DNA from: Pocillopora damicornis
Taxonomy: Eukaryota
Reading direction: 5' to 3'
NCBI RefSeq assembly: GCF_003704095.1
Contig: NW_020847472.1
Span: 310,001-374,000, forward strand
Length of the DNA stretch: 64,000 nt
Every line of letters starts with the position of its first letter. Position 1 is the stretch's first letter. Made by a program: the position numbers and the translations under genes. The notes below the pieces were generated by a model. The model saw only the letters and a program-made list of their open reading frames with translations, was not told the DNA's origin and did not search any database. Shown piece by piece: positions 42,155-42,409 of the stretch.

Positions 42155-42409
42155 GAATAAACTTTGACAGCGGAAGTTTCAAGGTTCTACATTGACGTCA
42201 CCGAAAGCTTTCAGTAGTACTGTTTTTCTTTTTTCCTTTTATTCCAAAATATTGATTTCCAAGGTAGGAGAAATGCAACTTGCTGATATGACAATCAAAC
42301 ATGATAATCTCACTGCAATCTCGTACCCGGAAAATGCAAATCAGCACTCCTGAAAGCTTTCAGTGACGTCACTGAAGGACCTTGAAACTTCTGTTGACAA
42401 AGTTTGTTC
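42155..42409. promoter_or_regulatory. Inverted 68-bp duplication with a CRE (TGACGTCA) in each arm; candidate bidirectional promoter of the Ig gene and ACCS-2
   Basis: Arms 42155-42222 and 42342-42409, 58/68 identical and ungapped by manual alignment. CREs at 42193-42200 and 42364-42371. Candidate first-exon donors on either side (42047 minus, 42442 plus). Confidence 0.65.

What the first reader, a model, noticed from the sequence alone, without database searches (positions are those of the whole stretch)
42155..42409. Mirror-image promoter: a 68-bp inverted duplication with twin CRE sites between two divergent genes
Seen: arms 42155-42222 and 42342-42409 are 58/68 identical in inverted orientation. 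Each has TGACGTCA plus a GAAAGCTTTC palindrome; the right arm holds the perfect 18-bp palindrome TTCAGTGACGTCACTGAA and the left arm holds CGGAAGT (ETS-like). The right arm ends 16 nt before a micro-exon (ATG 42425, donor 42442) that splices in frame to ACCS-2. The left arm points into a candidate non-coding first exon of the Ig receptor (donor 42047, acceptor 40975). Known: TGACGTCA is the CREB/ATF site. Inference: one core promoter was copied in inverted orientation, so an unrelated receptor gene and an enzyme gene came under shared cAMP/stress control.
Basis: partly seen in the sequence, partly recalled or inferred. Interest (0 to 1): 0.75.

Follow-up and report, generated by a model that had tools for sequence, protein, structure and literature searches.

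The report
Transcribed inverted repeat beside shared coral promoter
A real, one-of-a-kind 79-base inverted duplication carrying two cAMP-response-like sites sits between two back-to-back coral genes, but it is transcribed as part of the untranslated first exon of one of them rather than forming two mirror-image promoters, and is most likely the old scar of a local copying accident.

Summary
The inverted repeat is real. Each arm carries TGACGTCA and GAAAGCTTTC. The arms occur nowhere else in the 234-Mb genome and have no target-site duplication, so this is not a MITE.

The 97-nt spacer is mostly an 86% copy of the Ig gene's own intron/exon junction 1.5 kb away.

RNA contigs confirm the non-coding Ig first exon (donor 42047, acceptor 40975). 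One spliced 3144-nt contig runs unbroken from 42048 to 42393, so the left arm, the spacer and 63 of the right arm's 79 nt lie inside the Ig 5'UTR. The mirrored-TSS model fails for that transcript.

ACCS-2 contigs run collinear through the expected in-frame acceptor, with in-frame stops before AUG 43198. The in-frame micro-exon is therefore unsupported.

My reading is an old fold-back or template-switch scar beside a head-to-head promoter. The right-arm CRE is promoter-proximal and the left-arm CRE is a passenger. The mRNA leader should fold into a long hairpin (-129 kcal/mol, z -7.9).

True TSSs, CREB binding and conservation outside Pocillopora could not be tested.

The parts
42155..42233 (.). 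Left arm of the inverted duplication. It carries TGACGTCA (42193-42200), GAAAGCTTTC (42203-42212) and CGGAAGT (42171-42177).
42234..42313 (-). Spacer patch: an 80-nt, 86% copy of the Ig gene's intron/exon junction (source 40693-40772), in the same orientation as the source. It shows CpG decay and a TAA where the source has TAC.
   Evidence: mismatches read off the alignment
42314..42330 (.). 17-nt filler between the patch and the right arm; origin unknown.
42331..42409 (.). Right arm. It carries TGACGTCA (42364-42371), the 14-bp palindrome CTGAAAGCTTTCAG (42350-42363) and the 18-bp palindrome TTCAGTGACGTCACTGAA (42359-42376).
42048..42393 (-). Non-coding first exon (E1) of the Ig-receptor gene as seen in RNA. 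The donor GT is at 42047-42046. The 5' end of the spliced contig is at 42393; the true start is at or beyond that. E1 contains the left arm, the spacer and 63 of the right arm's 79 nt. uAUGs lie at 42302 (34-codon uORF) and 42192.
   Evidence: (X1 record 2; X2 record 21 covers 42048-42197)
40862..40974 (-). Ig gene exon E2 (113 nt): end of the 5'UTR, a minimal uORF (AUG 40955), the main AUG at 40946 and a signal-peptide-like start.
   Evidence: a 113-nt gap in record coordinates, and bin depths 14.2 and 4.91 that fit 84 + 29 nt of a depth-33.7 contig..
40427..40741 (-). Ig gene exon E3, the first Ig-like domain (Pfam Ig_2, E 1.3e-06). Its 5' junction is the source of the spacer patch.
40693..40772 (-). 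Source of the spacer patch: the last 31 nt of the intron plus the first 49 nt of E3.
42415..42422 (.). Palindromic TTAATTAA. It lies in the 42-nt stretch (42394-42435) that no X1 contig covers, between the Ig contig end and the rightward low-depth contig. Candidate shared TATA-like core element (inference only).
   Evidence: position; depth arithmetic
42425..42441 (+). The sequence features exist, but no RNA contig shows its use.
42436..42928 (.). Stretch transcribed at low depth in X1 only (contigs 42436-42797 at depth 4.88 and 42779-42928 at depth 3). The depth is like that of ACCS-2 intron contigs (4.1, 5.5). Strand unknown. It contains an old interspersed repeat at about 42504-42699.
43138..43305 (+). 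First ACCS-2 exon seen in RNA: 5'UTR plus AUG 43198, spliced 43305>44477, 44537>45313 and 45383>45942. In-frame stops lie upstream of the AUG. X1's contig has 30 further 5' letters that were not placed.
41766..41835 (-). A 78% direct copy, inside intron 1, of the E1 donor junction (42013-42081). This is a second locally copied splice junction at this locus.

Best explanation
The structure is a locus-specific, old inverted duplication. The arms are about 79 bp and 16% diverged. The spacer was filled with an 80-bp patch copied from the Ig gene's own intron/exon junction 1.5 kb away.

I read it as the decayed scar of one local fold-back or template-switch copying event, next to the start region shared by a head-to-head Ig-receptor gene and ACCS-2.

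Shown:
- The repeat is unique in the genome.
- It is present in independent DNA and RNA contigs.
- The left arm, the spacer and most of the right arm are transcribed inside the Ig gene's non-coding first exon, whose contig ends at 42393.

Inferred:
- The divergent core promoter lies just outside the right arm, around the palindromic TTAATTAA at 42415-42422.
- The right-arm CRE (42364) is then the promoter-proximal site that could give CREB/ATF input to both directions.
- The left-arm CRE is a passenger copy about 200 nt inside the exon.
- In the mRNA the arms pair into a ~79-bp imperfect hairpin. Together with three uAUGs this should hinder cap-dependent scanning and lower translation of the receptor.
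For: - Repeat: 79-nt arms at 84%; 66/79.
- Uniqueness: the own-genome DNA search returns only this locus for the arms. A 33-nt arm pattern with up to 3 mismatches gives 2 places, the two arms, against 0 for the control pattern.
- No matching flanks...AATAAAC before the left arm versus CTCCGTT... after the right arm.
- Spacer patch: 86% over 80 nt to 40693-40772. This is close to the 84% between the arms, which is compatible with one event. 4 of its 11 differences are CpG losses (read off).
- Not an assembly artefact: DNA contig X19 record 10 covers 42146-42516 with 1 difference, and RNA contig X1 record 2 covers 42048-42393 with 2.
- Transcription: X1 record 2 (3144 nt) is laid at 40427-40741 and 42048-42393, with 113 record letters between them. 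That matches exon 40862-40974, which has consensus minus-strand splice sites. Bin depths fit exactly (14.2 = 33.7x84/199; 4.91 = 33.7x29/199; 11.8 = 33.7x55/199 + 4.88x102/199).
- Control for DNA contamination: Ig intron 1 (41145-41940) has depth 0 in X1.
- Fold of 42048-42420, minus strand: -128.9 kcal/mol against -84.6 +/- 5.6 for shuffles, z -7.89, with 0 of 100 shuffles folding as well. The hairpin alone gives -106.8.
- uAUGs at 42302, 42192 and 40955.
- Literature: CREB prefers bidirectional promoters (PMC2774331, passages). Fold-back and template-switch events that make short inverted copies and templated insertions are described in PMC11724301, PMC7954356 and PMC3907307 (abstracts in the search listing only).
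Against: - Only 1 of the 3 RNA runs laid shows the exon running through most of the repeat, to 42393. X2 stops at 42197 and X7 has no contig there.
- Contigs cannot show true starts, strand or level, so the TSS positions are inferred.
- The TTAATTAA core-promoter idea rests on position alone. X1's rightward contig begins only 13 nt beyond the box.
- The single-event origin is inferred from similar divergence. Microhomology at the junctions cannot be read after 16% decay.
Neither the age nor which arm is the original was tested.
- The repeat-bearing exon shows fewer differences in X1 (2/346) than E3 (5/315) or the flank 42436-42797 (7/360). This could hint at constraint, but the numbers are too small to decide.
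- The effect of a hairpin on scanning is recalled textbook knowledge (Kozak), not tested here.
Confidence: 0.58

Rival explanations
1. One core promoter was copied in inverted orientation, each arm drives one gene outward from mirror-image start sites, and both genes share cAMP/stress control.
For: - The arms are mirror images, and each holds a full CRE.
- The genes are divergent.
- The arm is not a genome-wide repeat.
- Contigs cannot exclude a minor internal start.
Against: - The spliced Ig contig holds the left arm, the spacer and 63 of the right arm's 79 nt (42048-42393). X2's contig reaches 42197, past the mirrored position of about 42130-42155.
- The in-frame ACCS-2 micro-exon is not seen. 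Contigs are collinear from 43138 / 43147 through the in-frame AG at 43192-43193, and stops precede AUG 43198.
- The 30 unplaced 5' letters of X1's ACCS-2 contig add no depth at 42339-42537 (depth arithmetic).
Confidence: 0.1
2. The duplication is kept by selection at the DNA level as a doubled CRE module. Two full CREs 171 bp apart would act as a stronger cAMP/ATF-responsive element for the divergent promoter, wherever the start sites are.
For: - The central CpG of the CRE is intact in both arms, while 2 other CpGs differ between the arms (42172/42392 and 42202/42362).
- The 22-nt core TGACGTCAC-N-GAAAGCTTTCAG matches at 21/22.
- Full CREs are rare here: 4 in 64 kb.
Against: - At a 16% mismatch rate, a 22-nt stretch with at most 1 mismatch has a probability of about 0.11 before correcting for the choice of stretch (my arithmetic), so it is not significant.
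- The left CRE lies about 200 nt inside the transcribed exon.
- There are no binding or expression data.
Confidence: 0.15
3. The repeat is kept for its RNA. A long 5'-leader hairpin would act as a translational switch, a double-stranded-RNA signal or a small-RNA precursor.
For: - It is transcribed in the sense orientation inside the Ig mRNA leader.
- The predicted hairpin is very stable.
- The exon shows few differences between Pocillopora samples: 2/346 and 1/371.
Against: - Any transcribed inverted repeat folds like this.
- There is no Rfam match (0 matches at E <= 1).
- The arms have no other copy in the genome that could be a target in trans.
- The one RNA-only difference in an arm (T>C at 42215 in X1) turns a G.A mismatch into G.G. 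It is not the A:C context favoured by editing enzymes (that preference is recalled).
- No small-RNA data could be laid.
Confidence: 0.12
4. It is a MITE or foldback transposon, or a head-to-head pair of retroelement stubs, whose terminal inverted repeats happen to hold CRE-like words.
For: - Inverted repeats of this size are common in this window: 4 of 148 tiles score higher.
- Earlier scan notes describe Penelope-like head-to-head stubs in this genome.
- An interspersed repeat with at least 40 copies lies about 95 nt to the right.
Against: - The arms occur only at this locus.
- There is no target-site duplication.
- The interior is a copy of the neighbouring gene's own splice junction, not transposon sequence.
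- Caveat: the assembly covers 234 Mb of an estimated 349 Mb and lacks high-identity repeats (PMC6208414).
Confidence: 0.03

Closest known systems
CRE-bearing bidirectional (head-to-head) promoters of animals
   Same: Two divergent genes have transcript ends less than 1 kb apart, with a full TGACGTCA next to the start region. In human cells CREB binds preferentially at bidirectional promoters, often downstream of a TSS (PMC2774331). Here the right-arm CRE lies 22-29 nt inside the Ig contig end.
   Different: Here the CRE is duplicated as part of a 79-bp inverted repeat, and both copies lie within the stretch seen transcribed. Binding and cAMP response are untested in this coral.
Fold-back or template-switch inverted duplications with a spacer and templated insertions (MMBIR/FoSTeS-type events, short-range template switches)
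   Same: An inverted copy lies next to its original and is separated from it by a spacer. The spacer is filled with a patch copied from nearby sequence, 1.5 kb away. The event is local and single-locus. The general class is described in PMC11724301, PMC7954356 and PMC3907307 (abstracts in the search listing only).
   Different: This one is ancient and decayed (84-86%), so junction microhomology cannot be read. It is fixed in a wild coral lineage and now forms part of an exon.
Structured, uORF-bearing 5' leaders that restrain translation
   Same: The leader is at least 346 nt plus 28 nt (E1 42048-42393, then E2 40974-40947 up to AUG 40946). It has a predicted ~79-bp hairpin and three uAUGs.
   Different: The hairpin here is a by-product of a DNA duplication, and no translational data exist. 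The inhibitory effect is recalled general knowledge.
MITEs / foldback elements
   Same: Terminal inverted arms flank a short interior.
   Different: It occurs at one locus only, has no target-site duplication, and its interior is copied from the host gene.

Membership tests
Bidirectional promoter | Two genes on opposite strands with starts less than 1 kb apart | tested here: met
   The Ig spliced contig reaches 42393 (minus-strand splice signals). The ACCS-2 spliced contig reaches 43138 plus 30 unplaced letters. That is 745 nt between contig ends. These are contig ends, not mapped TSSs.
Bidirectional promoter | Shared regulatory element or co-expression of the pair | not testable with these tools
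   All runs were kept as contigs, which give no expression levels.
CREB/ATF-regulated promoter | Full CRE TGACGTCA close to a transcription start | tested here: met
   42364-42371 lies 22-29 nt inside the Ig contig end and 65-72 nt left of the rightward contig start (42436). Only 4 such sites occur in 64 kb.
CREB/ATF-regulated promoter | Factor binding and a cAMP or stress response | not testable with these tools
   Needs ChIP or reporter assays.
   Ig contigs extend through the left arm (X2 to 42197, X1 to 42393). No contig uses the micro-exon. A minor start cannot be excluded.
MITE / foldback transposon | Many copies in the genome | tested here: not met
   only the two arms of this locus
MITE / foldback transposon | Target-site duplication flanking the arms | tested here: not met
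   The flanks AATAAAC / CTCCGTT do not match.
Fold-back / template-switch inverted duplication | Inverted copy adjacent to the original, with a spacer | tested here: met
   79-nt arms with 97 nt between them
Fold-back / template-switch inverted duplication | Templated patch from nearby sequence at the junction | tested here: met
   42234-42313 is an 86% copy of 40693-40772
Fold-back / template-switch inverted duplication | Microhomology at the junctions; absence of the structure in an outgroup | not testable with these tools
   The junctions are too decayed to read. No outgroup locus was reachable.
Hairpin RNA / small-RNA precursor | Transcribed long hairpin | tested here: met
   (the fold is predicted)
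Hairpin RNA / small-RNA precursor | Small RNAs from the arms; a known RNA family | tested here: inconclusive
   Rfam gave 0 matches.

The most novel reading that the evidence does not exclude
The same 79-bp module would work twice. As DNA, its CRE sites would tune a divergent promoter. As RNA, the two CRE-bearing arms would pair into a long leader hairpin that gates translation, or marks the mRNA as double-stranded. An immune-type Ig receptor would then be made only when both transcription is induced and the hairpin is unwound or processed, for example under stress. That would be a coupled DNA/RNA switch born from a single fold-back accident.
Probability: 0.07. Interest if true: 0.6.

Novelty: new member of a known kind. 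Interest (0 to 1): 0.3.

Why it matters
If my reading holds, this is a clean natural example of how one small copying accident can remodel the 5' end of a gene. It added a second CRE, a copy of a splice junction and a long hairpin to the leader of an Ig-type receptor mRNA in a reef coral.

It also gives a concrete, testable case of CRE use at a cnidarian head-to-head promoter. It does not reveal a new kind of regulatory architecture. The attractive idea of two mirror-image promoters is not borne out by the transcripts available.

Tried and rejected
1. MITE / transposon end. Rejected because the arms occur only at this locus and have no target-site duplication.

2. Assembly artefact. Rejected by independent DNA and RNA contigs that span the repeat.

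3. A-to-I editing at 42215 (T>C seen only in X1 RNA). First considered because the site is inside the stem. Dropped after working out that its partner (42349) gives G.A, becoming G.G, not A:C. No DNA of the same individual was available, so a SNP is the simpler reading.

4. A recurrent extended CRE palindrome. The 18-mer with up to 2 mismatches gives 17 places in the genome, against 11 for the control read backwards. That is no meaningful enrichment.

5. Homology of the ACCS-2 upstream region with the ACCS-1 upstream region. Sensitive blastn found similarity only from 43169 onward, matching 29293. The repeat did not come with the ACCS tandem duplication.

The protein-guided metagenome scan found 190 pattern matches but no relative. 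The 20-nt arm motif found one contig (L005), a G+C-rich contig with no further likeness, which I take as a chance hit. The word search with exon E3 returned 1 protein from 3 candidates, at 99% identity. Its 90% cluster has 11 unnamed members. These gave no context.

7. Known RNA families. None.

8. An inference that X7's ACCS-2 exon contig reached 43119. I withdrew it after reading the 'from_end' columns, which show that the piece starts near 43186.

9. The joined (spliced) protein models were not built or searched. Exons were searched separately.

10. The big representative search, structure prediction and the atlas were not used. The question does not rest on the proteins.

11. Supplementary files were not consulted. 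The annotation supplements of PMC6208414 might hold the official gene models for both genes.

Full report
**What is there**

The window is part of a 234,350,878-base, 4393-contig animal genome.
- An earlier scan note calls it the coral Pocillopora damicornis.
- The published assembly of that species is 234 Mb (PMC6208414, passages).
- I did not verify the name by sequence.

At the stated place repeat finder reports one inverted repeat. Its arms are 42155-42233 and 42331-42409, 79 nt long and 84% complementary, with 97 nt between them.

- TGACGTCA at 42193 and 42364. These are 2 of 4 in the window, against 0.64-0.77 expected.
- GAAAGCTTTC at 42203 and 42352, the only two in the window.
- The 18-bp palindrome at 42359.
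- CGGAAGT at 42171.
- ATG 42425 followed by GT at 42442.

The repeat far exceeds shuffled sequence: score 74 against a mean of 16 and a maximum of 32 in 300 shuffles. However, 4 of 148 real tiles of this window score higher. Size alone is therefore not unusual in this transposon-rich genome.

**Copy number and origin**

The arms are found nowhere else in the genome.
- A DNA search with 42140-42420 returned only this locus.
- A 33-place arm pattern with up to 3 mismatches returned exactly the two arms, and 0 for the control.
- The flanks show no target-site duplication.
- The exact 18-bp palindrome is unique in the genome. With up to 2 mismatches it gives 17 places, against 11 for the control.
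One caveat: the assembly lacks high-identity repeats.

The same search showed that the spacer is not anonymous. 42234-42313 is an 86% direct copy of 40693-40772. An earlier first-reader note says the same (s1-779060).

RNA contigs place the source exactly on the Ig gene's intron/exon junction: 31 nt of intron plus 49 nt of exon.
- The copy has lost CpGs (ACGTCG > ATATTG).
- It has a stop where the source reads Tyr.
- It therefore looks like unselected sequence.

A second junction copy lies nearby. The donor junction of the first exon (42013-42081) recurs at 41766-41835 at 78%.

Arms at 84% and a patch at 86% are compatible with a single old event. An inverted copy next to its original, separated by a short patch templated from nearby, is the known signature of fold-back or template-switch repair (PMC11724301, PMC7954356, PMC3907307; abstracts in the search listing only). 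That this was one event is my inference.

**Genes on either side**

To the left, on the minus strand, lies a type I membrane protein gene.
- It has three Ig-type exons: Pfam Ig_2 at 1.3e-06, Ig_3 at 6e-15 and Ig_3 at 1.8e-09.
- It has a transmembrane-looking exon (ORF 38103-38363).

To the right, on the plus strand, lies ACCS-2.
- It matches ACCS-1 (about 29274-36800) exon by exon.
- It has weak aminotransferase class I/II matches, below Pfam's cut-off on single exons.

**RNA evidence**

All runs were kept as contigs. Three RNA runs from three studies and one DNA-like run were laid on 40150-46100.

Ig gene:
- X1 record 2, a 3144-nt contig, lies on 40427-40741 and on 42048-42393.
- 113 record letters lie between those two pieces.
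- Exon 40862-40974 is 113 nt, has consensus minus-strand splice sites, and fits the bin depths exactly.
X2 record 21 (42048-42197) confirms the donor.
- The first exon does not begin at the left arm. In X1 it continues without gaps, and with 2 differences, through the left arm, the spacer and 63 nt of the right arm, to 42393.
- Ig intron 1 has depth 0 in X1, so this is not contaminating DNA.
- DNA contig X19 record 10 (42146-42516, 1 difference) shows the repeat in an independent sample.

ACCS-2:
- Spliced contigs join 43305>44477, 44537>45313 and 45383>45942 in X1 and X2. X7 shows the first two joins.
- These contigs are collinear with the genome upstream to 43138 (X1) and 43147 (X2).
- In that exon, stops at about 43123 and 43180 precede AUG 43198 in frame.
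- The in-frame micro-exon model is therefore not what these transcripts show.
- X1's contig has 30 further 5' letters that were not placed. The depth arithmetic leaves no room for them at 42339-42537.

Region between the genes:
- X1 alone has low-depth contigs at 42436-42797 and 42779-42928 (depths 4.88 and 3). This is similar to ACCS-2 intron contigs (4.1, 5.5).
- The region right of the repeat is therefore weakly transcribed. Its strand and which gene it belongs to are open.
- No X1 contig covers 42394-42435, where a palindromic TTAATTAA (42415-42422) lies.

**How it most likely works**

Shown: the Ig mRNA leader contains the left arm, the spacer and most of the right arm.

Inferred:
- The divergent core promoter sits just outside the right arm.
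- The right-arm CRE is then promoter-proximal, a position typical of CREB sites at bidirectional promoters in human cells (PMC2774331).
- The left-arm CRE is a passenger.

On the RNA side:
- Folded as RNA, 42048-42420 (minus strand) gives -128.9 kcal/mol, z -7.89, with 0 of 100 shuffles folding as well.
- The hairpin alone gives -106.8.
- The leader also has uAUGs at 42302 (34 codons), 42192 and 40955.
- From general knowledge, which I recall and did not test, such a leader should be translated poorly.
- No Rfam family matches.

**What could not be done**

- True start sites, strand-specific coverage, expression levels, small RNAs, CREB binding and conservation outside near-identical Pocillopora samples were all out of reach.
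- The single read-laying run was used.
- The metagenome scans gave nothing relevant.
- A search for papers combining 'bidirectional promoter', 'inverted repeat' and 'cAMP response element' found 0. I make no wider claim about what is in print.

**Verdict**

The mirror-image promoter reading is only partly supported. The best reading is an old local fold-back or template-switch scar, now embedded in the 5'UTR exon of the Ig receptor gene, beside a CRE-bearing head-to-head promoter. It is a new example of known kinds of event and element, and of moderate-to-low interest unless the leader hairpin proves to be regulatory.

Noticed in passing
window 42504-42699: An old interspersed repeat about 190 bp long, with at least 40 copies in the genome at 68-79% identity. 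It lies about 95 nt to the right of the inverted repeat, inside the weakly transcribed stretch. Family not identified.
   Followed up: partly
window 43800-44015: A very high-copy repeat inside an ACCS-2 intron. Summed contig depths reach 10^4-10^5 in all four runs, with many internal joints and loose ends. A short direct repeat lies at 44018-44051 / 44114-44147.
   Followed up: no
window 41766-41835 vs 42013-42081: A 78% direct copy of the donor junction of the Ig first exon lies 246 bp downstream, in intron 1. Its donor consensus (GTAAGT) is better than that of the donor actually used. No RNA evidence shows that it is used.
   Followed up: partly
window 4128 and 19405: The only other two full TGACGTCA sites in the 64-kb window. 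I did not check whether they also lie at gene starts.
   Followed up: no
window 42215: T>C in the X1 RNA contig only. The DNA-like run X19 has T. The site is inside the left arm, but the pairing context (G.A) does not suggest editing. It is probably a SNP between Pocillopora samples.
   Followed up: partly
window 29274-36800 and 43183-53000: ACCS-1 and ACCS-2 are tandem paralogs that match exon by exon (22 blastp hits between translated segments of the two stretches, some in overlapping frames, 43-89% identity). The Ig receptor gene lies in the opposite orientation between them.
   Followed up: partly
window 40739-40743: The acceptor of Ig exon E3 is a tandem CAGCAG (NAGNAG-type) site. Alternative use would add or remove one codon. 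Not examined in reads.
   Followed up: no
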